Shown here piece by piece: positions 44,673 through 59,603 of a stretch of DNA of 64,000 nt. The DNA comes from Selaginella moellendorffii. Its lineage: Eukaryota > Plantae > Lycopodiophyta. The position numbers and the translations under genes were made by a program. Position 1 is the first letter of the stretch. Each line of letters starts with the position of its first letter. The stretch lies in the NCBI RefSeq assembly GCF_000143415.4, contig NW_003314267.1, positions 1,686,100-1,750,099 of the forward strand, given 5' to 3'. A model generated the notes under the pieces. The model ran no database searches. It saw only the letters and a program-made list of their open reading frames with translations, and was not told the origin of the DNA.

Positions 44673-44746
44673 TCACATTTTTTTGTTACTATCGGGTCGA
44701 TACATACGAACGAGATCATTTTCGGCTTACCAGAGAGGTGGTGATA

Positions 44747-46627
44747 CTAAACGTTGATGCCGAGAATGAATCCATTGCTGTACCAAGGGACGTTGATGGA
44801 CGGCATTTGGTGCCTCACGGGAGAACGAAACGGATTCGGAGTGAGCGGGTAACTGATGTGAAGACCAGCTGCTCGTAGAACCTGCTTTGCGTTGAGGCAG
44901 CACGTCTCCGCATAGTCCGTGAAGAATCCTGGAACTCCCAGCGCCTTGATGACCTCTAGAGCTCCAGTCCAGTTACCATCGCTCTCGAGAGACGAGTTTA
45001 ATCCCACCACCAGGTGTGGCGGCGGCAAGGAATCAGCGTGCTCCTGGTAGAAGCCTTGCACGTAAGTCACTTTGACGCTCTCCTCCAGCACTTCGGTCAT
45101 CCCGGAAAGCGAGCCTGGAACTTCCGGCCCAACCATGATAATGTGAAGGCTGCCGGCTCCACTCAAAAGATGGGAGATCTCTGTAAAAGCCGGCATCCAG
45201 TCGAGCTCGGGCTCCGGACCGATGTAGTGAAGAACAACCTCCTTGTTCTTGGCGAGGAGGTTCTTCGTGAAGGGACTCAAAGCTGTGACGATGTGGTAGA
45301 CCGTGAGTGGATGCGAGAGCAGTGCTGCCACCGGACTCTCGGCAGGAAGGCCTCGCAAGTCGTAGTAGTCGGCCCAGTTTGATAGCACCACCATTCCAGC
45401 CGAGCCGTAATGCTTGACAGGCTCGTCAACCGGGTGTTGCGAATCCTCGAGTCCCCAAGCTCTAGTCTCGCCACCCTCCGGTGGAAGCAAACCAAACGGG
45501 CAGTTCTTGAAGCACCCACACATCCTCCTCCACATCCCCTTGCCGTGAAGTCCCAGAAGCTCGAGCCAGCGGCAGGAGTGATCGATGAAGCACGGGAATG
45601 CAAAGCCTTTGAACTCGAGCTCCTCCTCGAGATCCATCATGGCCTTGTAAACCTCGCAGTTCCCCTTGTGTGATTCCTTCCAGTGCCGCTTCTGGCAGCC
45701 ATGGCTGCAGTAGACCACGGCCTTACAGCGGCTGCACCGAGGAGCCTTCTCGGCCGAGACCTCCTTCTCGCAAACGATGCACTGGCGAGGCAATGCCAGC
45801 AGCACGTCCATCATCTCGGGCGAGAAGTCGCTCACTTCCGCCAGCTTTGGAAGGCTGCCACCTTGCTGATCGTTTTGCTGCTGCTGTTCTTCCTTTGGCG
45901 GAAACGAAACTCTCACGCAAGTGATATCCCACTCCTTTCGATCCTCGGCTGGCCACTGGATATCGATGAACTGCATCACGCTTTCGATACTCCGCTGTGG
46001 CTTCTCCACCACCTGGATCGCCGGGACCATCTGCGCTAGAGCTCTCATGCAAGCGTACAGCCACCTTAGCTCCTCCAGCGATGGATTCCGAAAGCCAAGG
46101 CTTTCTTCTCGGGCACCACCTCCAGCTCGAGAAGAAACCACGTCGATGAGTGGAAACGCTTTCTCGCCAGCGATTTCTAGACCCAGCTGCTTGATGATCT
46201 TCCTGTTGGGCAGAGAGATCTCGGCCTCGGGTCCAAATGTCACTCGCAGGAATCCCCTCTTTGGAATGGACTTTGGATCCGGGAAGCCTCGAATTCCCGC
46301 TATGGCCGCCACCGCATCCTCCTCACTGCGGTAGAGATTGAGGCTTGGATCGCCGAAGCTCGTGAACTGGACGCAGTAGAAGGGCGGGCGAGAATCCGGC
46401 CAGTCGGTGTCCTTGCCGATGCGCAGGCCAAAGATCTCTTGCGCCCTGAGCTTCTTCCAGGGATTACACCTGTGCAGCGCTGCCGCTGCCCGGAACACCG
46501 ATTTGAGGAATGCGGTGCCCAGCCCCTCGATCCTGACCAGGCTGCCGCCATAGCCGCGGCCCAGCCCTGGCCCGACGCCGAAATGCTGCTGGAAGGCGTC
46601 GAAGAGCTCCCGGAGGTGCGCGTCCAT
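44747..46627 (-). CDS. MYND zinc-finger protein with an MSS51/ZMYND15-like C-terminal domain, 626 aa
   Basis: CIVC..CSRCKAVVYCSHGCQKRHWKESHKGNC, followed by WADYYDLRGL, LHYIGPEPEL and NPFRSP. Confidence 0.88.
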   Translation of the reverse strand: MDAHLRELFDAFQQHFGVGPGLGRGYGGSLVRIEGLGTAFLKSVFRAAAALHRCNPWKKLRAQEIFGLRIGKDTDWPDSRPPFYCVQFTSFGDPSLNLYRSEEDAVAAIAGIRGFPDPKSIPKRGFLRVTFGPEAEISLPNRKIIKQLGLEIAGEKAFPLIDVVSSRAGGGAREESLGFRNPSLEELRWLYACMRALAQMVPAIQVVEKPQRSIESVMQFIDIQWPAEDRKEWDITCVRVSFPPKEEQQQQNDQQGGSLPKLAEVSDFSPEMMDVLLALPRQCIVCEKEVSAEKAPRCSRCKAVVYCSHGCQKRHWKESHKGNCEVYKAMMDLEEELEFKGFAFPCFIDHSCRWLELLGLHGKGMWRRMCGCFKNCPFGLLPPEGGETRAWGLEDSQHPVDEPVKHYGSAGMVVLSNWADYYDLRGLPAESPVAALLSHPLTVYHIVTALSPFTKNLLAKNKEVVLHYIGPEPELDWMPAFTEISHLLSGAGSLHIIMVGPEVPGSLSGMTEVLEESVKVTYVQGFYQEHADSLPPPHLVVGLNSSLESDGNWTGALEVIKALGVPGFFTDYAETCCLNAKQVLRAAGLHISYPLTPNPFRSPVRHQMPSINVPWYSNGFILGINV

Positions 46628-49780: not shown

Positions 49781-50364
49781 AAGCTTCCATATTATTTTGT
49801 ACCATGGAAAATTCGCAACAAAACTCCGACTTGATCTTGTCTATGGTTTGTGGTCCAATGGCCTTTTGCTTTCAGTTGGCTTGACCACTGGAAAATCGCT
49901 CTCTTCCATTTCTTCCCAAAACTTGTCAAACAAATTGATGTCTTCCTTCCAAGGGAAGAATCTCTTGAGAATAAAAAGGTGGCGAGATCAAGCAACAACC
50001 AGTACAAAACGTCCTTCCTCGCCTGCATCATCACGCTGCATGATTCCAGAGATATCTGACACACTGCCTGATGAAACACGTCAGTGTCGCGGAAAGCTCT
50101 ATCCATACAGCTGAAAACAAAGAACAAAGAACAGTGAAAAAGAGCTCTTCTAGAAACGCTATTTCCTCAATCAATCCAACCCAACGAGGACTTCTAGAAA
50201 CCATGGGTCAAGCAAAAGCAAGGATAATTGAGGCAAAGGAAGGCAATCAAGTATTGGCACAAAGGAGAAAAAATAAAGAGACGATGGTCCTACCAAGAGC
50301 GAAGATCGAGAAATCACTATCAAGGGAGAAAAGAGCATACAATGATACTTTGATACAATACCCC

Positions 50365-50700
50365 CAACTTGGCAGCTTTACCTCTGGCTAGTGGACATGT
50401 TTCTTCCGGCCAACTTGTTTTTATCCCTGGATGATCACTCATCCACGCGCAATTCTTTTTTTCACTAGCGAGCGATGCTTCAGCCTATACAAAAGCCAAG
50501 CGTGTCACGAGAAAGGAATTTTACCAGGCCACGCAAGGCACGGCAGTGGGAGAAATCGAATCCACTCTAGCTTGCAACGTCATGGGAGATAACTTTGTCC
50601 GGGATCTTATCTATCGGAGAGAAGCTGATCTGTTAATCTGCAAATTTCCAAGGTGATTCCAGGCAGTGGAGGATCAAAAACCATCCTGTCTATGTCCACC
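50365..50700 (-). pseudogene. Degenerate duplicate of the last RRS1 exons
   Basis: For example tttacctctggc...gtttcttccggccaacttgtttttatccctggatg and cagcctatacaaaagccaagc match 50850-51200. Confidence 0.7.
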
Positions 50701-50846
50701 ACTCACTGAATCGTGGTGGCCGCGACTGTTGCAAGGCTCTTTCACGGTGATCTGGAAAAAAAGCTGTTAATTTTCGACAACTTTTCATCTCGTCACATAC
50801 CCTGTCGATACTTTGGCGATAGAGTCCAGCGCATCCGTCCTCAGTC

Positions 50847-52346
50847 CTATTTGGCATCTTTACCTCTGGCGAACTTGGAGCCTTTAGAGGCTTTGTTTCT
50901 TCCGGCCAGCTTGTTTTTGTCCCTGGATGGCCCCTTTCTACCACCGCCACGCCCAAATTTCTTTTTACTGTGGCCACCATTAGCGATGTTTTGATGCTCG
51001 CGTTGGCTCTGCTGCGATGTGTTGTAGCTGCGAACAGCCTACACAAAAGCCAAGCACGCCGTGAGAGAAGTTCGCCAGGGCACGAAAGGCGAAAATCAAA
51101 TCGCTCACCTTGTTCACATCAACAATCTCCTGATTGTGACGGGAGAGCACTTTGTCCAGAATCTTATCGGACTGTTGTTTCTCCTCTTTGGAGGATCCAA
51201 CGACTGGAAGGAACTGTATTACACATTTTTTATGCGTTAAGAACAAAGAATAACAGAAGGGAAAAGGGAGAACAGAAATCTCACCTTTCGATGCTTTCCT
51301 GCGTGTTTTGCCGGCTTTTCACCCTCCAGCTTACGATCAAACTTGCCTACGCTGGCCGTAGCAGTACTTGCGTGTCCAGCAATCTCGCCGAGTTCATCTT
51401 TCGTGAGTTTCTTTGGAACTTGCGCGGAGCCGGTTATAGGCAAAGCCATCGTCGACAATTGGACAGTACTAATGATCAAAACAACAATCAGACGATATGG
51501 TTTGAGACTAATAATATTTACCTCGGGAGCGCAGATTTTCCGGCAACTTTGAGCGTGTGTTTCAAGTTCTGGAGACGATTCTTCTCTTGCTTTTCAATGC
51601 GTGCCTTCTTTTCTTTCTTCATGTTTGAGAATGGATCTTCTCCAGGTTCTGCATAACCCAGAGAGACAAATGCGCTAAGTGAAACCAAATATGGAAACAA
51701 AAGCCACTTACCATCAGTGCTCTTGGCCTCAATTACAGGTATGTCTCGCTCATCTGCAACTCTCTTATAACCATACCGCCTTCTCCATTCCCCAGCGTCT
51801 TCATCGAAATCTAGCTTGCTGCGTTTTCTCTTCTTTATACCTGGAAAAAAAAAAAAAATTCCTTGTAGACACAAATCCAAAGAGACCACACAAGATAGAT
51901 TACCTTTGCTCTGTGCAAATTGCTCCCATTTCGTGGGTGGCCGCGGCTTCGGGAGCTACAAGGACAAATCCAAAATGACTGAGAAGGAGAAAAAAGAAAG
52001 AATTTCTACTCACAGGTTTTTCTCTAGGAAGCTTTGTTGTGGGAGGAGGCAAGATCACGAGACGCCCATACTTATCCGCCTCAGAAGGCATGTTAAACAG
52101 CTTCTCTGCCAGCGCTTGAATGGCTCGAGCGCCCTTTCGGAGGCATTGCTCGTCATAATCATCGCTAGAAATCATCCACAAGGAGAAAAATGTAGCTCCA
52201 TCCGAGCGAGAAGAAAATCCTCCCTACCTGGAAGTCGACGCCTCCTCGATTCCTGGATCAGTAGCGTCGAAGACGAGCAGATTGCCGATGTCCATGCGCA
52301 ATCCGGACAGGGAATCCATCCCCGCGCCTTCTTCCTCGGCCGCCAT
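50847..52346 (-). CDS. RRS1: Ribosome biogenesis regulatory protein RRS1
   Basis: Spliced exons encode [60 protein letters not shown] and a basic tail. Telo-box AAACCCTA just upstream. Confidence 0.93.
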
Positions 52347-52388
52347 CGCGGAAGAACTAAAACCCTAGAATCAAAATCTCCAAGAACC

Positions 52389-52901
52389 CTAAATCTCTTT
52401 ATTGCTGGATGGGTTTCTTCGAAAAATCTCTACTCCCAAATAATCTACGCTCCCTTTGACAGCAACGTGAGGCTTTCCCACTCTCACGCGAATGCTCGTC
52501 GCGGATGGAAATCTCTCAAACACGCCCTTTGCAATGCTCGCTGCCACGGCCTCCAAGAGAGAAAATGGTGGACCTTCTACCACAGCCTTGACGATCCTGG
52601 CACCAAAAAAATCGATTTTTGGGAGGAATTCTTCCAAGTTTCTACCTGTAGATCGCTCCATAGCTGATTGAATCCTCGATGTTGTCGCTGTTGCAAGCCT
52701 TGGACAAATCGGTCCACACATCCGCGTCCACCAGGAACTTTTGGCCCAATTTCTTCTCTTCGTCGTACACGCCGTGGTAGCCGTGGAAGATCATGCCACG
52801 AAGAATGAGCTTATCGCCATTTGGGTCACTGCCGCAAGAACACACAAAAAATTTCGTTTTTTTTTCTGAGGGGAAAGAAATTTGCAAGCTTCATACCTCA
52901 T
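52389..52901 (-). CDS. FOLB: Dihydroneopterin aldolase
   Basis: Three exons: MSDPNGDKLILRGMIFHGYHGVYDEEKKLGQKFLVD...SISYGAIYR|IVKAVVEGPPFSLLEAVA...VGKPHVAV..VDYLGVEIFR. Confidence 0.95.
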
Positions 52902-52944
52902 CTCGTAGCACCGGGAGAACACTGCTGCTCCTTCGCCTAGGGCT

Positions 52945-54002
52945 CTAGAGCGACTTTAAGTAGGAGTTAAATGCCAAGTAAGGTGTTTTTGGTGCGTCGA
53001 TCGTCCCAGTAAATCCAGGCTCGAGAACTTTTCGTTGCTCCAGATCGTATTTCTCATTGATCTTGTCCTGTGCAAGAAGTTCTCGCAATGGTGGCGGAGG
53101 CACCACTTCCGGTTTTATGATCTGGATTGCAAAAAGAAAAAGAAGTTATTTTCTGGCAAGAAAGAGGAAAGTTTTCATCACCTTGACAGGAGGCCATTCG
53201 AAGTTTTTGAGCTGGGGGCAGTAGAGTTCTAGCCTGATCTTCTCTTTGTAAGGAGGATTAAGCGTGGTTATCACATCGCTCCAAAGCATCAGATCGACGA
53301 GCTCGTTGCATTGCTCGAGATCGAGCTCTTTCAATCCTCGAACTACAATGTGTGCTGTTTTCAAGTGGACGCACCGCGCTAGAGAGATTCTCTCGAGAGA
53401 ATTCGACTGCGAAATGTCACGCACTGTGAGCAAAGTCTGCCGGAAAAGAGCAATGAGAGAAGGTACCTCTATCAAGACGTAGTTTAGAGCCGCACAGCAC
53501 GATAAATCCAGTTCCTTGAGCGCTGGAGCAACAGTGTAAGGCGACATGACATACCTGGTCAAGAACTTGGCTCCCCGGAGCTCTAGTTTCTCCTGGAGAT
53601 AGAACTTTGAGACGATCCCAGAGGATTCAAGAGGAACTTACAAGATTTGGGCGAGGAACGCTGAAGAGCTCGGTGATGAAAGGCTCATCCACTCTGGAAC
53701 TCCAGATGATAGATATCTACAACATGAGCTGAGCTGCTAAGAACGAGGAAAGAAAAGCATAGAACTTACCAAGTTACATGTCGCTAGCAAATTGAGACGA
53801 GTCTCGTTAAAGGCAGGCGAAACCACGGGGTCAGGAAGAGCTTCCAGCGGTCTCTCCCATTTTCCATTTTCAAGCGCCTAAGTGAAAACAAATGTGAGAA
53901 ATCCATGGATCGATCAAATCACAGGACCTTGATCCAGCCAGAGTCTGGCTTTGGTGCGGCGCCCTTCTTCTTCCCTTTGCCCTTGCCCTTCTTGGGCGCC
54001 AT
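52945..54002 (-). CDS. Uncharacterised LRR-containing protein with a Lys/Gly-rich N-terminus
   Basis: MAPKKGKGKGKKKG start; in-frame spliced exons with LKELDLSCC, LERISLARC and LKELDLEQC; final exon ends ...NSYLKSL*. Confidence 0.7.
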
Positions 54003-54139
54003 AGCTGCCGCACCAAAGCTCTCGCACCGAATGGCGGGACGCAACGTTCGGATGGCCACATCCTCACCGTCAAAATTAGGGCTTGAGTCGTTTAAAATAG
54101 GTTTAACGGTTATAGATTTCCCGCTTGCTCGATCGTAAG

Positions 54140-54370
54140 CACCACGTCGATGTTTGGTCTTCTCGGAGAGCTTCTTGGAATCGACCCTCAAGCCTCTCAA
54201 GGTGTCGGGTAAGGAATCGGGTTCACCGAGATCAAGGCTTCACGAATCCAGTTCCATGCTTACGTGACGGATCGTACCTTTGTGCACAATCCTTCGAAGT
54301 TTTCGGAGTCAACAAAAGTCTTGCTCTACTGCTCCAGTCTGCTGCCGACAAAGCTCTTCTTGGTTCCTGG
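54140..54370 (-). pseudogene. Deleted fragment copy of the kinase 5' region and PPR 3' end (57000-57322)
   Basis: Shared strings gagcttcttggaatcgaccctcaag, ggttcaccgagatcaag and ctgctccagtctgctgccgacaaagctcttcttggttc. Confidence 0.8.
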
Positions 54371-55528
54371 GACGTTGTCTGGCTTTACACTCTTGGCTTG
54401 GGGTACTATGGTGACAAATTATAGACCTCATGTGAGAAATTCTTCATTATATTTACATGAAAAATTATATTCAGATGATTTATTTAAAGTAAGCCAAATA
54501 ATTATGTTTGTATAGATGACAAATTATATCAACTTAGAGAAAATTTTCTAGAGTTTAGCGTTCCTCATTCTAATCTTGAAAATGGTAAATTCATAGATGA
54601 AAAACATGTAAATATTTATTCTTGTGTAAGGATTATTATAAATGATGATGGACAGGAAGAATGCCATTGTAGGCTTTATTTGAAATACTACTTTTCAAGA
54701 GAATTTTTTTTTTAAAGAACTAGTATGATGTAGATTGTGTTTGGCAAAGCATGTAGGAATACAGTTTCCTCATAATTCATTTAGATACTACTTATGTCAT
54801 TGAATGCTTACAAAAATGGGTGAAGTGATATATTTTGCATGGTAAATATAATACATAAATTAATGACTTTGTTATGGCCTTGGTTAATTCATTTCATAAA
54901 TTATTATTTGAAGGTTTTTCTTGCAAGGAGTATTACAAGCATACTAAGGAAGTTTGCACTTCAGGAACATATCTCATTTGAGGATATAAGCCTTCTTGAC
55001 AAGTTACAGATATGCTTGTAATCCGAAGAAAATCTTTCCAGTGTGCATTTGATAGGAAGGGCATTTTTATGCTATAAAATTTTAAGTGCAACAAATTCTG
55101 AAAGCTGGTATGTAGCTGATATATCTTTATTGATGTGCAATTATGGGGATTTCAGCCTTTTATACAATCACATCCATGCTATGCAAAACATTTAAAGGCT
55201 ATTAGCACGTATTGAAGTTGGGAGAATTAGTGAGATGACATTTGAGCTTTGAGCATATATCAAATCAAGCAAGAAAATTACAATAATAAATTACACTTTT
55301 TTATGGAAAAGAGTTGACTGAAAATGTTTTTTATGCTAGATTCATCTAGAAGTGCTTGAAGTTGAGAAAACATCTTCTAGAACTAAAAATTTGAAATGCT
55401 AATTAGTTGGCCTTGTTATCTTTTTAATTTCTTTGAAGACATAAGAAGCCCAACCCTTTTCCTGAGCTTTTTGAAATATATGGGATCTCAAAATATATTT
55501 TGAGAAATATATATTATTACATAATGAG

Positions 55529-57205
55529 TCACGCAAGGAGGAGATTACCTCTTTGCGTAGCTGTCGGCTTACTAGAGCTCTCTATAGCAGTGGACCGCGA
55601 GAGATAGCAGCGTATGCACTCCAGCTCCCAGCAAATCTCCTGAAAGCACGGCCTCATCTCGGGATTACTAGACCAGCACTGCTGCACCACTCCTCCCAAG
55701 AGTGTGTTTACGTATCCCGGCAGCGAAGGCCTCACTCCCGGTTTCATCCAGCTCCCCTTGATCTTTTTAATATCCACTCCTCCGGTCTCGCAAAACGGTA
55801 CCTCTCCAGTGAGAATGCTGTAGCACGTCATCCCAAAGCTGTAAACGTCCGCCTTGAGCGTGTACCTCGCACAGAACTCGTCACCACCACCGCGGTCTGG
55901 AACCATGACTTCCGGAGCCCTGTAGAATCCTGTGCCTCGCTTCGAAGTGTGAGCTTGGTCGGAGCACTCCATCGTCTTAGCCGTGCCAAAGTCCGCGAGC
56001 TTGAGCAAGAGGCCGCTCGAGGAAGAGCCGGGAGCCCGGGTCAAGAGGATGTTGCTCGGCTTCACGTCCCTGTGGATGATCTGGAGCGAGTGCAAGTACT
56101 TCAGGCCTCGAGCGATCTGGAGCATCATGTCGACGCAGACCAAGGCGGAGAAAGGTGGCGCAAAGCCGCTTCTTTGCTTGGACTTGTTGATGTAGGACTC
56201 GAGATTGCCAGCTTCCATGAGCTCCAGCAGCAATCCATACTTGAGGCCGCTGTCTCTCTTGGGCTCGACATGGCCGAGAGCCTGGACGATGTGAGGATGC
56301 TGGAGCTGCAAGTGTAGAGCCGCCTCCCTAACGAAAGTTGCCTCGTCTTTGAAGAGCTTAAGAGCGTATCTCTGTCCGAAGGCTTGGACTTCTTGGACGG
56401 CGGCGTAGCTCCCACATCCCAGAACACTTCCCATGACGAGCACTTCGTCTTCCAGCTGAGTGGAAGCCACGACAACGTCTTGCACGCAGCTAGCCGAGAT
56501 TCTTGACGGGTGTAACCTCTCCAGCAACAGGTTTGTTGCCTGAAGTTGGTCTTGCGAGAGATCCGTCCTGTTACTGGCCTCGCCAAGAATTTTCACAGCT
56601 TTGAGGAAAAGGGAGGCCCGTTGCAAGAGCTTGCGGAGTGACGTCTCGGTCTCGGCTATGATTCCCGCAAAGAGCTCGGCGGAAGGAACGGCCTTCTTCT
56701 CCACCTGGATGGCATAACTGAGCATCCCCAGCTGCGTCCAAAGCCTGTAGATCTCATCCCACTTCTCGCACAAAGTCTGGTTCGAGATGGCAGCAGCGAT
56801 CCCAATCGCTGTGGAAGAGTCCTTGCACTCCCTTAGAAGCATCATCTCTTCGCGAAGAAGCTCCGCAGATCGATCGTGGAGAGTGTCCAGATGGCAGATG
56901 AGCTGCGATAAGTTTCTCCCCATACGCCAGTTGACTAACACTACTTTGTCCCTGTCCTTTCTACCTCCCAAGTACCTGAAGAACTTGAAAGCACAACTTC
57001 GACGCTTGGTCTTCTCGCAGAGCTTCTTGGAATCGACCCTCAAGCTGCTCAAGAGATCGGCTAAAGAATCAGGTTCACCGAGATCAAGACTCCCTGCTTC
57101 ATCTTCTGCCTTCACTAATCCGGTTCCATCCTTGAGGGACGGAATGACAGTGCCGCTCTTACCTGCTGATAACTTCGTAGATGCGGCGATAAGGCACGAG
57201 AACAT
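55529..57205 (-). CDS. TKL-type protein kinase with a ~250-aa helical N-terminal domain
   Basis: GCGSYAAV, YALK, IIHRDVKPSN, ADFG, GTGFYRAPE and KADVYSFG. Intronless; first ATG at 57205. Confidence 0.9.
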   Translation of the reverse strand: MFSCLIAASTKLSAGKSGTVIPSLKDGTGLVKAEDEAGSLDLGEPDSLADLLSSLRVDSKKLCEKTKRRSCAFKFFRYLGGRKDRDKVVLVNWRMGRNLSQLICHLDTLHDRSAELLREEMMLLRECKDSSTAIGIAAAISNQTLCEKWDEIYRLWTQLGMLSYAIQVEKKAVPSAELFAGIIAETETSLRKLLQRASLFLKAVKILGEASNRTDLSQDQLQATNLLLERLHPSRISASCVQDVVVASTQLEDEVLVMGSVLGCGSYAAVQEVQAFGQRYALKLFKDEATFVREAALHLQLQHPHIVQALGHVEPKRDSGLKYGLLLELMEAGNLESYINKSKQRSGFAPPFSALVCVDMMLQIARGLKYLHSLQIIHRDVKPSNILLTRAPGSSSSGLLLKLADFGTAKTMECSDQAHTSKRGTGFYRAPEVMVPDRGGGDEFCARYTLKADVYSFGMTCYSILTGEVPFCETGGVDIKKIKGSWMKPGVRPSLPGYVNTLLGGVVQQCWSSNPEMRPCFQEICWELECIRCYLSRSTAIESSSKPTATQRGNLLLA

Positions 57206-57267
57206 TGTGCGCAATCCTTTCTCGCAATGCTTTGATGTTTTCCAAAGTCAACCAGCTCGTCCAAGTC

Positions 57268-59603
57268 TTAGGCGACCAGCTCCACTGCTCCAGTCTGCTG
57301 CCGACAAAGCTCTTCTTGGTTCTCCGGTTTAGTTTCCAAAACCTGGGACCCTTCTCGCAACGAGGTTACGCATGCGACTGTGATCTCGTTCGCTTCTACG
57401 TCGTTAGCCTGCATTTGTTCGAACAGCTCGGACGCTCTTTCCAGCTGACCCTGCTTCACATAAGCGTCGAGCAGAGCGTTCCAAAATGCGGTAGACTTGT
57501 CCGGGGTTCTGTCGAAGAGATTTTGTGCGTCTTCCAGAGCTCCACACTTGCAGTACATGCCCAGCAGCGCCTCTCTGATACCACCATCCTGATACAAATC
57601 CTTGCCTTTGATGCTCTCATGAACAGCCTTGCCCCGCTCCAACTTCTGGAGCTCCGCACAGGCCTTGAGAACGCTGATGATCGTCAGCTTGTAAGGAACC
57701 GACTGGACGTTCTGGTAGACGTCGAGAAGCTCTCGCCAGTGTCCGTGTCTCTCACAAGTTGCTATCATAGAGCTGGAGAGCAGCACATTCTTCGTTGGCA
57801 CGGACTGGAAGAGCTCCCAAGCAGCATCGTAGAGACCACAGCGGCCATACATATGGATCAGAGCGCTTCGTACGACCACGTCCGATTCAAAGCCACTCTC
57901 TTCTATGCCGGCATGAAGAAGTCTTCCCTCCGCCAGGCACTCGGCACCATTGCATGCGCTCAAGGTGGTCGTGAAGGCAAACTTGTCAACCCGGACACCT
58001 TCTAGCCTCATGAGTCTGAAAAGCCCGAGTGCTTCTTTGCTGCGATGCCACTGTGTGTAGAAGGATATCATATGAGCCCAAGCAACGTCGTCGTATTCGC
58101 GTCTCTTCCAGAAAACCTTGGCAGCGTCTTCGAGGCTGCCACACTTTCCATACATGTTGAGCAATGCGCTGGAGACCGCATCCTCAGTTTCCAAACCTCT
58201 CGCAGTGACCACAGCATGAACCTGTCGACCATCTTCGAGAGCTGTAGCGCCGGCACACGCGTTGATCACGGTGACAAAAGTGCTGACGCTTGGAGTGAGC
58301 TCCATCTTCCTGTAGAGCTCGAGCGCCTCCTCGTACGCACTATGTTGGACGTAGACCGAGAGCATTGCGTTCCAAGTGATGATATCTTTCCCCTGGATTT
58401 CTTCAAAGACCTTCCTTGCGTCTGTCAGGCTACCGCACTTCCCATACATGTTGAGTAGCGCAGTCTTGACGATGAGATCGTTCTCAAACCCGTTTCCAGT
58501 GAGCTGCGAGTGAATAAGCTTGCCTTCTTGCAAAGCACTCATTTTCCCGCAGCAATTGAGGACGGTCACAAAGGTGACGTTGTCCGGCTTTACACTCTCG
58601 CCTTGCATTCTCTGAAACAGCTTCAATGCCATCTTGTAGTGACCACGCTCTGAGTAGGCCGAGATCATAGAAGTCCAAAGAATAGCGTCCCGCGAAACCA
58701 TCTCGTCAAACATTCTCTGCGCGTCCCTTAAGCTCCCACACTTGAGATACATCTCTATGAGATGGTTCCCGAGTATCCTGTCCTGCTCCTGCCCGCTATC
58801 CCGAATGTAGCTGTGAATTTTCTTCCCTTGCTGGAGAGCCTTGTTCTTAGCGCAAACTCGTAAAACTCTAGCGTAAGTGGCACTGTCCGTCTTGTGTATC
58901 ATCCCTTGCATGCGATCCACTAGAATCCTCAAGTTGTCCTCGTCGGGACTCCTGGCAGCACTGTTCTTGTACCCGAAAGCGGCACAGAATACTTTGCTAA
59001 CGTGGTGTTGTCCTCGAAGCGTTTGTGTTTTGTCTCGCCAATCTGGATAAGAAACCAAGAACTTGTAACGCTTTGAAAGTCCAGGATGAAAAGAAGTTTA
59101 AAAAACTCTCTAGCGCACTCACACAAAAATGCCATCCTTGACGATACAAAACATCCAAATCTCCAGACTAAAGATCAAGCATTGGCAGGGAAATTTTTTT
59201 CTAGAACGTAAACGCTATAAGATCTAGGAAAAGGATCGAGACTAGAAAAAATGCCTACACAATTGAATCGGATTCACGAGAAAATATCGAAGAACATACA
59301 AAACATCCAAATTTTCAGACGAAAGATCAAGCATTAAGGGGAAAAAAAATTCTAGAACGTAAACGCTTAAAGATCTAGGAAAAGGATCGAGACTAGAAAC
59401 AATGCCTACACGATTGCATAGAAAACATTGAACGATCGAACTACAGAACGATTGAAAGCATAATCAGCAAAGAAAAGAATGCCGCGCAAGAAGAATCTCT
59501 CGAGACAGGACATGATCAAGGATAGCATAAGCAACATACCTAGATTTCTTCGCTTCCTCCTGTGCGCGATCGCCATCGCCATAGACGAGAGCGCGGCCGC
59601 CAT
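57268..59603 (-). CDS. PLS-class PPR protein with no E/DYW domain seen; short exon 1 may encode a targeting peptide
   Basis: Exon 1 at 59540-59603 (MAAALSSMAMAIAHRRKRRNL) splices in frame to 57268-59042, which has many MYGKCG PPR motifs. Confidence 0.85.
59144..59411. repeat. ~150-bp direct duplication in the PPR intron
   Basis: atacaaaacatccaaat...ctagaacgtaaacgct..agatctaggaaaaggatcgagactagaaa..atgcctacac occurs twice. Confidence 0.9.

What the first reader, a model, noticed from the sequence alone, without database searches (positions are those of the whole stretch)
50847..54002. Operon-like trio LRR-FOLB-RRS1 with 43-bp and 42-bp stop-to-start spacers: candidate nuclear polycistron
Seen: all three genes are on the minus strand. 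The LRR stop (52945-52947) lies 43 bp from the FOLB ATG (52901), and the FOLB stop (52389-52391) lies 42 bp from the RRS1 ATG (52346). There is no room for a 3' UTR, poly-A site, promoter and 5' UTR. The second spacer is essentially two telo-box-like motifs (TAGGGTT overlapping the stop, and TAGGGTTTT), and AATAAA lies inside the last FOLB codons. Established: polycistronic nuclear mRNAs occur in green algae but are rare in land plants. Inference: either bi/tricistronic mRNAs translated by leaky scanning or re-initiation, or promoters embedded in the upstream coding exons with overlapping transcripts.
Basis: partly seen in the sequence, partly recalled or inferred. Interest (0 to 1): 0.8.

Follow-up and report, generated by a model that had tools for sequence, protein, structure and literature searches.

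The report
Three abutting Selaginella genes, not an operon
Three same-strand genes of the clubmoss Selaginella moellendorffii really are only 43 and 42 bases apart. Public RNA assemblies show each downstream gene making its own message, at its own level, starting about where the gene before it stops, so this is extreme gene packing and not an operon.

Summary
On the minus strand, an LRR-like gene (54002-52945), FOLB (52901-52389) and RRS1 (52346-50847) are separated by 43 and 42 bp. The other haplotype of Selaginella moellendorffii has the same layout.

RNA contigs from four studies confirm the FOLB and RRS1 terminal exons, including FOLB's 5-nt ATGAG coding mini-exon.

The polycistron reading is not supported:
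- The LRR gene has zero or near-zero depth where FOLB (14-123) and RRS1 (54-593) are expressed.
- The RRS1/FOLB depth ratio ranges from 2.0 to 7.7.
- In every run a coverage hole separates the FOLB and RRS1 contigs.
- FOLB contigs reach 5' only to the LRR stop codon. RRS1 contigs reach 5' only to the base after the FOLB stop.
- One FOLB contig ends 20 nt after the in-frame AATAAA.
- A telo-box sits in the RRS1 leader.

Best reading: three monocistronic, abutting transcription units. Each spacer is the downstream gene's 5' UTR, and each promoter lies inside the upstream gene.

Contigs cannot fix exact ends or exclude rare read-through. The LRR gene's 3' end is unknown.

The scan's first readers noted three similar gene trains elsewhere in this genome; none has been checked. 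Interest is modest.

The parts
52945..54002 (-). LRR-like gene CDS. My model has 6 exons and 261 aa: 54002-53928, 53877-53770, 53716-53642, 53592-53467, 53406-53182 and 53121-52945. It belongs to a small family found only in Selaginella moellendorffii.
   Evidence: The model has an intact frame and GT-AG introns. The allele on the other haplotype is P0121; P0122-P0124 are paralogues. Pfam LRR hits are all below cut-off. Atlas look-alikes are all LRR families. RNA depth is 0 in X3, X9 and X13 and about 3 in X1. No gene is called here on this haplotype in the public annotation.
52902..52944 (-). Spacer 1 (43 nt). It is transcribed as part of the FOLB 5' UTR.
   Evidence: The X9 contig joins 52947-52897 to FOLB exon 2. 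The spacer is identical in the other haplotype.
52897..52947 (-). FOLB first exon as far as RNA contigs show it: a 5' UTR of at least 46 nt plus the ATGAG coding mini-exon (52901-52897). Its observed 5' limit is the first base of the LRR stop codon.
   Evidence: joint 52828/52897 (skips 68, CT..AC) in X9 with a 51-nt side. The X1 loose end CATCTCGTAG at 52830 corresponds to exon-1 bases 52908-52899. No coverage lies above 52947 in any run except a depth-3 contig inside the LRR gene in X1.
52829..52896 (-). FOLB intron 1 (68 nt, GT-AG). It is A/T-rich and is a possible place for LRR 3'-end formation; that last point is inference only.
   Evidence: The X13 contig runs 15 nt into it (to 52843), which suggests unspliced RNA.
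52389..52828 (-). FOLB exons 2 (52828-52646) and 3 (52596-52389) with intron 2. They encode dihydroneopterin aldolase, 131 aa.
   Evidence: Pfam FolB gives E 3e-18 and 1.8e-12 for the two exons. The protein equals P0125 (XP_002965896.2). Intron 2 is confirmed in all four runs.
52398..52403 (-). AATAAA within FOLB's last codons (Asn-Lys). It is the likely FOLB poly(A) signal. It also lies about 10-35 nt upstream of the observed RRS1 5' extents.
   Evidence: It is the only such hexamer between 53121 and 52200 on this strand. The FOLB contig in X13 ends at 52378, 20 nt downstream.
52347..52388 (-). Spacer 2 (42 nt). It is transcribed as the RRS1 5' UTR and may overlap the last bases of the FOLB mRNA.
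   Evidence: RRS1 contigs reach 52388 (X1), 52382 (X3), 52370 (X13) and 52366 (X9). FOLB contigs reach down to 52378 (X13) or 52404 (X3, X9).
52360..52367 (+). Telo-box AAACCCTA (TAGGGTTT in gene sense), 14 nt upstream of the RRS1 ATG.
   Evidence: One search gives the position; the count is at chance level. In Arabidopsis and rice, telo-boxes are concentrated in 5' UTRs and lie within -50 to +50 of the TSS of ribosome-biogenesis and translation genes (PMC3022908).
50847..52346 (-). RRS1 CDS, 8 exons, 352 aa (ribosome biogenesis regulatory protein).
   Evidence: Model. Pfam RRS1 hits on exons 2, 4 and 5. All seven introns are seen as joints in RNA contigs. A 352-aa RRS1 gene is called on both haplotypes.
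50752..50800 (-). GT-AG intron in the RRS1 3' UTR, starting 47 nt after the stop. The 3' UTR continues beyond 50200.
   Evidence: Joint 50751/50801 appears in all four runs, with contigs continuous from 50890 (RRS1 coding) to 50200 and beyond.

Best explanation
These are three separate, monocistronic genes packed head to tail with essentially no intergenic DNA, in a gene-dense stretch of the Selaginella moellendorffii genome.

Shown by the contig evidence:
- Each 42-43-nt 'spacer' is the 5' UTR of the downstream gene.
- FOLB RNA begins at or near the LRR stop codon.
- RRS1 RNA begins at or near the FOLB stop codon.
- The three genes are expressed at very different and unlinked levels: LRR about 0, FOLB moderate, RRS1 high.

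Inferred:
- The core promoters of FOLB and RRS1 lie inside the last exon of the gene before them.
- The RRS1 promoter uses the telo-box in its leader, as ribosome-biogenesis genes do in other plants.
- FOLB mRNA is cleaved and polyadenylated about 11 nt after its stop codon, directed by the AATAAA in its last codons. Its 3' end therefore meets or slightly overlaps the RRS1 start region.
- Each protein is translated by ordinary cap-dependent scanning of its own mRNA.
For: 1. Unlinked expression (four RNA contig sets from four studies). LRR depth is 0 in X3, X9 and X13 and about 3 in X1. FOLB contigs have depth 69, 14, 123 and 71, and RRS1 contigs 536, 54, 593 and 145. The RRS1/FOLB ratio is therefore 7.7, 3.9, 4.8 and 2.0.

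2. No bridging contig. Depth arithmetic shows a zero-coverage hole between the FOLB and RRS1 contigs in every run:
- X1: 52389-52453
- X3: 52383-52403
- X9: 52367-52403
- X13: 52371-52377

3. 5' extents. The FOLB contig stops at 52947, the first base of the LRR TAG, with nothing upstream. RRS1 contigs stop at 52388, 52382, 52370 and 52366.

4. 3'-end signal. AATAAA at 52403-52398 is the only such hexamer in the region. One FOLB contig ends 20 nt after it.

5. Promoter motif. The telo-box at 52360-52367 lies within 30 nt of the observed RRS1 5' extents. Published work places telo-boxes at -50 to +50 of the TSS of such genes and finds them about 8-fold enriched in 5' over 3' UTRs (PMC3022908).

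6. Translation. A scanning ribosome would meet 12 AUGs before the FOLB AUG on a tricistronic RNA, and 5 before the RRS1 AUG on a FOLB-RRS1 RNA.

7. Tight packing recurs nearby:
- PPR to kinase: tandem gap of 62 bp.
- zf-MYND and hydrolase: convergent gap of 2 bp.
- At the LRR paralogue locus: gaps of 34-161 bp.

8. The public annotation already treats the three as separate genes.

9. The adjacency is not conserved in the moss Ceratodon purpureus or at the LRR paralogue locus. This argues against a functionally obligate unit.
Against: - All RNA evidence comes from assembled contigs, not reads. Contigs cannot show true starts, ends or strand, and they drop rare forms. Low-abundance FOLB-RRS1 or LRR-FOLB read-through RNAs are therefore not excluded.
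- Contig depth is a coarse measure.
- A haplotype SNP at 52371 and tip-clipping by the assembler can break contigs near this junction. FOLB-side contigs never reach 52372, as they would at a simple SNP bubble. Even so, this weakens the 'hole' argument.
- FOLB contigs end at 52404 in two runs, before the stop codon. I cannot explain that.
- No poly(A) tail was seen directly.
- The LRR gene's 3' end was not observed at all, and no AATAAA follows its stop. Its RNA must run into FOLB.
- The telo-box count in the window is at chance level.
Confidence: 0.78

Rival explanations
1. True polycistron. One capped RNA carries FOLB and RRS1 (or all three ORFs), and the downstream proteins are made from it by leaky scanning or re-initiation, as in green algae.
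For: Stop-to-start gaps are very short (43 and 42 nt) and identical in both haplotypes. All three genes are on one strand. No canonical poly(A) hexamer follows the LRR stop. Similar 'trains' were noted by first readers elsewhere in this genome (unchecked).
Against: - The LRR gene is silent where FOLB and RRS1 are expressed.
- The RRS1/FOLB depth ratio is 2.0-7.7 and variable.
- FOLB and RRS1 contigs are never joined in four runs.
- AATAAA precedes the FOLB stop, and a contig ends 20 nt after it.
- The upstream ORFs are long, with 12 and 5 AUGs to bypass.
- Algal polycistrons show near-perfect co-expression and poly(A) signals only after the last ORF (PMC7896298).
Confidence: 0.06
2. Partial read-through. 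FOLB and RRS1 have their own promoters. When the LRR gene is switched on, perhaps in reproductive tissue, its RNA has no terminator of its own. It runs through FOLB and ends at the FOLB poly(A) site. The result is an LRR-FOLB bicistronic RNA in which FOLB is effectively 3' UTR and is not translated, probably making the RNA a target of nonsense-mediated decay (NMD). This is compatible with the best explanation for the other two genes.
For: There is no AATAAA-like hexamer between the LRR last exon and 52403. The FOLB 5' exon starts at the LRR stop, so any LRR 3' UTR must overlap FOLB. Read-through polycistronic RNAs that are held down by NMD are reported at 271 Arabidopsis loci (PMC9768141, abstract).
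Against: No LRR 3' end was observed; the only LRR contig covers about 53181-53331 at depth 3 in X1. Plant poly(A) signals are loose, and the A/T-rich FOLB intron 1 could serve as one. No contig links LRR to FOLB.
Confidence: 0.2
3. Annotation artefact. The terminal exons are mis-modelled and the real stops or starts lie elsewhere, so the true gaps are larger.
For: The FOLB start rests on a 5-nt coding mini-exon. An older public model of FOLB is 'partial' and lacks a start (P0001). The LRR gene is not annotated on this haplotype, and the model on the other haplotype is probably mis-spliced.
Against: - The mini-exon splice is seen in RNA contigs of two runs.
- The FolB Pfam profile starts 8 residues into exon 2, and no in-frame ATG exists in exon 2 upstream of it.
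- The FOLB and RRS1 stops lie inside RNA-supported exons.
- The LRR C-terminus matches paralogues P0122 and P0123 to within two residues.
- If RRS1 started at the in-frame Met10 or Met18, the gap would grow only to 69 or 93 nt.
Confidence: 0.03

Closest known systems
Nuclear polycistronic loci of green algae (Gallaher et al. 2021, PMC7896298; leaky-scanning follow-up PMC11892635)
   Same: Co-oriented nuclear protein-coding genes with very short inter-ORF distances.
   Different: The algal loci show long reads spanning the ORFs, a single H3K4me3 promoter mark, poly(A) signals only after the last ORF, and near-perfect co-expression. Here expression is unlinked, contigs do not span FOLB-RRS1, and a poly(A) signal precedes the FOLB stop.
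Read-through (polycistronic) transcripts in Arabidopsis that are suppressed by nonsense-mediated decay (PMC9768141)
   Same: Land-plant tandem genes where the upstream transcript can run into the downstream gene. This is a plausible fate for LRR transcripts here.
   Different: Those are minor by-products of genes that also have normal intergenic regions. Here the intergenic region is absent, and no read-through RNA has been observed so far.
Abutting or overlapping transcription units of compact eukaryotic genomes, with promoters inside the upstream gene and UTRs that overlap neighbours. This comparison rests on my own knowledge, not a test here; examples are microsporidia, nucleomorphs, picoalgae and gene-dense parts of Arabidopsis.
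   Same: The downstream TSS lies at or inside the upstream gene's end, 3' UTRs are very short or overlapping, and regulation is independent.
   Different: Selaginella is not among the extremely reduced genomes. Gene-rich regions of S. lepidophylla average 1.1 kb between genes (PMC5750206). Gaps of 42-43 bp are therefore far below the norm for the genus, though they recur locally.
Telo-box promoters of plant ribosome-biogenesis and translation genes (Gaspin et al. 2010, PMC3022908)
   Same: AAACCCTA in the short 5' leader of a ribosome-biogenesis gene (RRS1), within about 30 nt of the observed 5' extents.
   Different: No accompanying site II motif (TGGGCY) was seen by eye in FOLB exon 3. The motif count in the window equals chance. 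Function here is inferred, not tested.

Membership tests
Green-algal-type nuclear polycistronic locus (criteria of PMC7896298) | Single RNA molecules spanning two or more ORFs | tested here: not met
   in four RNA contig sets no contig joins FOLB to RRS1, with a zero-coverage hole of 7-65 nt in each run. None joins LRR to FOLB. Contigs, not long reads, so rare forms are not excluded.
Green-algal-type nuclear polycistronic locus (criteria of PMC7896298) | Near-perfect co-expression of the ORFs | tested here: not met
   contig depths are LRR 0-3, FOLB 14-123 and RRS1 54-593. The RRS1/FOLB ratio is 2.0-7.7 across runs. Contig depth is a coarse measure.
Green-algal-type nuclear polycistronic locus (criteria of PMC7896298) | Poly(A) signal and tail only after the last ORF | tested here: not met
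   AATAAA at 52403-52398 lies before the FOLB stop, and a FOLB contig ends at 52378. No tail was seen directly.
Green-algal-type nuclear polycistronic locus (criteria of PMC7896298) | Single promoter mark (H3K4me3) at the first gene only | not testable with these tools
   No chromatin data are available.
Green-algal-type nuclear polycistronic locus (criteria of PMC7896298) | Short inter-ORF distance | tested here: met
   43 and 42 nt.
Green-algal-type nuclear polycistronic locus (criteria of PMC7896298) | An upstream ORF that leaky scanning could bypass (short, few AUGs, weak start context) | tested here: not met
   There are 12 AUGs in the 786-nt LRR CDS and 5 AUGs before the RRS1 AUG in FOLB mRNA. 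The FOLB start has G at -3.
Independent abutting transcription units | Each downstream gene has its own 5' end near or inside the upstream gene's end | tested here: inconclusive
   Contig 5' extents are 52947 for FOLB and 52388-52366 for RRS1, with no coverage upstream. This fits the feature, but contigs cannot prove capped starts.
Independent abutting transcription units | A downstream gene is expressed when the upstream gene is silent | tested here: met
   FOLB and RRS1 are covered in all four runs. The LRR gene has depth 0 in three runs and about 3 in one.
FolB / dihydroneopterin aldolase (PF02152) | Pfam profile match above the gathering score | tested here: met
   Exon 2 scores 66.8 bits and exon 3 scores 48.2 bits against a cut-off of 31.8. 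Together they cover profile positions 2-112 of 113. The protein is 60-67% identical to plant dihydroneopterin aldolases.
RRS1 ribosome biogenesis regulatory protein (PF04939) | Pfam profile match above the gathering score | tested here: met
   Exon 2 scores 39.7 bits and exon 4 scores 41.3 bits against a cut-off of 25. Exon 5 scores 21 bits. The locus gene call carries PF04939.
Leucine-rich repeat proteins | Pfam LRR profile match above the gathering score | tested here: inconclusive
   All LRR family hits on P0121, P0122 and P0124 are below cut-off (best 19.5 bits against 26.9). The exons alone give no hit. Atlas look-alikes are all LRR families, with score 0.90 and TM about 0.5. These are leads only.

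The most novel reading that the evidence does not exclude
Selaginella moellendorffii may have a recurrent class of head-to-tail gene 'trains' with stop-to-start gaps of about 40-60 nt. In these, 3'-end formation of one gene and initiation of the next would be physically coupled. Here the same AATAAA in FOLB's last codons would act as poly(A) signal on the RNA and as a TATA-like element, about 10-35 nt upstream of the RRS1 5' ends, on the DNA. In addition, the LRR gene, which has no terminator of its own, would be expressed only as an LRR-FOLB read-through RNA.
Probability: 0.12. Interest if true: 0.6.

Novelty: new member of a known kind. Interest (0 to 1): 0.3.

Why it matters
The locus tests cleanly whether near-zero intergenic distance in a land plant means operon-like expression. 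Here it does not.

It still shows how far packing can go in a vascular plant:
- A 5-nt coding first exon.
- 5' UTRs that fill the whole gap.
- A poly(A) signal inside coding sequence.
- Promoters inside the neighbour's last exon.

Practical consequences:
- Annotation pipelines mis-handle such loci. FOLB was once called 'partial', and the LRR gene is missing on one haplotype and mis-spliced on the other.
- Any editing or knock-out of one gene's last exon would probably hit the next gene's promoter.

First-stage notes record three similar trains elsewhere in this genome. If they behave alike, Selaginella would be a useful system for studying how termination and initiation coexist within a few tens of bases.

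Tried and rejected
- A contig piece upstream of the LRR gene (54323-54366, seen in X3, X9 and X13) was considered as a possible upstream exon of LRR or FOLB. I rejected this. The piece is a 43/44 copy of the PPR gene's 3' coding end (57279-57322), and the contigs' loose ends map to 57249-57278 and 57323-57352.
- Mis-modelled terminal exons: rejected.
- Looking up P0001 for contigs found nothing. P0125 gave only the two genome scaffolds and no RNA contigs.
- Synteny. The moss Ceratodon FolB has no RRS1 neighbour. Three FolB transcripts from unidentified plants carry a single called gene. The LRR paralogue locus has other neighbours. No FolB from another Selaginella or lycophyte came up, so conservation within lycophytes could not be tested.
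- Literature. Searches for Selaginella plus polycistronic returned organellar, tRNA-mRNA or unrelated papers among those listed, and none on nuclear protein-coding gene pairs. Nothing on abutting genes in Selaginella turned up. The 2011 genome paper is not held.
- Telo-box enrichment in the window: not above chance.
- Left out by rule. The spliced 261-aa LRR and 352-aa RRS1 proteins have no reference, so they were not sent to any search tool. They were joined only inside scripts, for translation and AUG counts, and searches were made exon by exon or through stop-free references.
- The large representative-protein search, structure prediction and complex prediction were not used, because no claim needed them.
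Full report
**What is there.** The window comes from Selaginella moellendorffii scaffold GL377571.1. FOLB exon 3 is 100% identical to SELMODRAFT_84592, and locus L004 carries the window's sequence at the FOLB start. Three intron-containing genes lie head to tail on the minus strand.

- **LRR-like gene:** ATG at 54002, TAG at 52947-52945. My model has six exons and 261 aa.
- **FOLB:** ATG at 52901, then exon 2 (52828-52646) and exon 3 (52596-52389), 131 aa.
- **RRS1:** eight exons, 52346-50847, 352 aa.

FolB and RRS1 pass Pfam cut-offs exon by exon. The 'LRR' label is weaker. Pfam LRR hits on the allele and its paralogues are all sub-threshold. Atlas look-alikes are all LRR families, but only at lead strength. 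The family has just four members in the protein collection, all from S. moellendorffii.

**Are the terminal exons right?** Yes.

- FOLB's coding sequence starts with a 5-nt mini-exon (ATGAG) followed by a 68-nt GT-AG intron. Exon 2 has no in-frame ATG upstream of the FolB domain, which starts 8 residues in.
- RNA contigs show the 52828/52897 splice in run X9, with 51 nt on the far side. In X1 a 10-nt loose end equals 52908-52899.
- The resulting protein equals the public 131-aa 'dihydroneopterin aldolase 1' (P0125). An older model (P0001) is 'partial' because it missed the mini-exon.
- All seven RRS1 introns and FOLB intron 2 appear as joints in the RNA contigs.
- The LRR C-terminus agrees with paralogues P0122 and P0123 to within two residues.
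- The second haplotype (GL377621.1) has the same three genes with the same 43- and 42-nt gaps. Its spacers differ at 0/43 and 1/42 positions, against 1-1.5% in exons and 3-6% in introns.

**One RNA or three?** I laid the contigs of four RNA runs from four studies on 50200-54600. The contigs are spliced, so they are RNA.

- **Unlinked levels.** The LRR gene has no coverage in X3, X9 and X13, and one depth-3 contig in X1. FOLB contigs have depths 69, 14, 123 and 71, and RRS1 contigs 536, 54, 593 and 145. FOLB and RRS1 are therefore expressed without the LRR gene, and the RRS1/FOLB ratio varies from 2.0 to 7.7.
- **No join.** FOLB and RRS1 contigs are never joined. The bin depths are fully accounted for by the listed contigs. 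That leaves a zero-coverage hole in each run: 52389-52453 (X1), 52383-52403 (X3), 52367-52403 (X9) and 52371-52377 (X13).
- **5' extents.** The farthest FOLB extent is 52947, the first base of the LRR stop codon. The farthest RRS1 extent is 52388, the base after the FOLB stop. The spacers are thus the 5' UTRs of the downstream genes.
- **3' end of FOLB.** The farthest 3' extent of FOLB is 52378. That is 20 nt after the AATAAA at 52403-52398, the only such hexamer on this strand between 53121 and 52200.

Taken together, FOLB's mRNA ends and RRS1's mRNA begins within the same few tens of bases. The two RNAs are distinct species at different abundance.

**Caveats.**

- Contigs cannot show capped starts, tails or strand, and they drop rare forms.
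- Contig depth is only a coarse measure.
- A haplotype SNP at 52371, together with tip-clipping, can break contigs here. At a simple SNP bubble, though, the FOLB-side contigs should reach 52372, and none does.
- Two runs end the FOLB contig at 52404, before the stop codon. I cannot explain this.
- The LRR gene's 3' end was not observed.

**Supporting sequence features.**

- A full telo-box (AAACCCTA, 52360-52367) lies 14 nt before the RRS1 ATG. Two telo-boxes in 64 kb is what chance gives. However, telo-boxes in Arabidopsis and rice are concentrated in 5' UTRs, and they lie within -50 to +50 of the TSS of ribosome-biogenesis and translation genes (PMC3022908). RRS1 is such a gene, and its observed 5' extents lie within 30 nt of the motif.
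- Translation of downstream ORFs from a shared RNA would be hard. There are 12 AUGs before the FOLB AUG, and 5 before the RRS1 AUG on a FOLB-RRS1 RNA.

**Comparison with known polycistrons.** Gallaher et al. (PMC7896298) define algal polycistronic loci by four features:

- spanning long reads;
- one H3K4me3 mark;
- poly(A) signals only after the last ORF;
- near-perfect co-expression.

Only the short inter-ORF distance is met here. Three criteria were tested and not met, and one cannot be tested. The locus is therefore not a member of that class. A residual possibility concerns LRR transcripts. When they are made, they may run through FOLB to its poly(A) site, like the Arabidopsis read-through RNAs that nonsense-mediated decay keeps low (PMC9768141). 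I put this at about 0.2, and it would not make FOLB translation polycistronic.

**Is it special?**

- Tight packing recurs around it. The annotated PPR and kinase genes in this window are 62 nt apart (57268/57205; 68 nt in the other haplotype). zf-MYND and a hydrolase converge to within 2 nt. The LRR paralogue locus has gaps of 34-161 nt.
- PPR contigs cross the PPR stop, the whole 62-nt spacer and 18 nt of the kinase CDS.
- First-stage notes of this scan list three similar 'trains' elsewhere in the genome. They are unchecked.
- Gene-rich regions in the genus are reported as compact but average about 1.1 kb between genes (S. lepidophylla; PMC5750206). Gaps of 42-43 nt are therefore extreme but not unique.
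- The FOLB-RRS1 adjacency is absent in the moss Ceratodon, and the LRR paralogue has other neighbours. Other lycophytes could not be examined.
- I found no paper describing this arrangement.

**Verdict.** The polycistron reading is not supported, and the embedded-promoter reading is supported (confidence 0.78). This is a new, well-documented example of a known kind of gene packing, and interest is modest (0.3). Long-read cDNA with CAGE and poly(A)-site mapping would settle it.

Noticed in passing
window 50200-50846 (minus strand): RRS1 has a long, spliced 3' UTR. A GT-AG intron at 50800-50752 appears in all four RNA runs. There is a further splice from 50382 to about 50112 or 50066 (X1 loose ends). 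Inside this UTR lies a degenerate copy (81-88% identical in pieces) of RRS1's last exon plus the end of intron 7, at 50364-50512 against 50846-51066.
   Followed up: partly
window 57188-57577 and 57205-57268: The annotated PPR (stop 57268-57270) and protein kinase (ATG 57205) genes are tandem with a 62-nt gap (68 nt in the other haplotype). PPR RNA contigs in X3, X9 and X13 run across the stop, the whole spacer and 18 nt of the kinase CDS. This is a second operon-like pair in the same window, here with a contig crossing the gap.
   Followed up: partly
window 54323-54366: A 44-nt fragment, 43/44 identical to the PPR gene's 3' coding end (57279-57322), sits about 320 nt upstream of the LRR ATG. 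It attracted PPR contigs in the read-laying step and is not itself shown to be transcribed.
   Followed up: yes
window 44744-44747: The annotated zf-MYND/MSS51 gene and an alpha/beta-hydrolase gene converge, with only 2 nt between their stop codons.
   Followed up: no
window 52945-54002; L005 8900-9957: The LRR-like gene is not annotated on this haplotype. The model on the other haplotype (P0121, 256 aa) appears to skip exon 3 (53716-53642) and to read through the intron at 53466-53407. Paralogue models P0122-P0124 disagree with each other in the same places.
   Followed up: partly
window 52228-52366 (run X9): One odd contig reads 52228-52366, then GGTCG, then 52228-52254 again (a go-back joint). 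It may be a template-switch or fold-back artefact at the RRS1 mRNA 5' end. Unexplained.
   Followed up: no
window 50891-50955: A cluster of five variants, each carried by about half the contig depth in all four runs. Several other variant contigs are also listed. This looks like expression of two RRS1 alleles or haplotypes; I did not compare the variants with the other haplotype's sequence.
   Followed up: no
window 54003-55528; L005 6249-8899: The region between the kinase and the LRR gene is 1526 bp here and 2651 bp in the other haplotype. This is a structural difference just upstream of the LRR gene.
   Followed up: no
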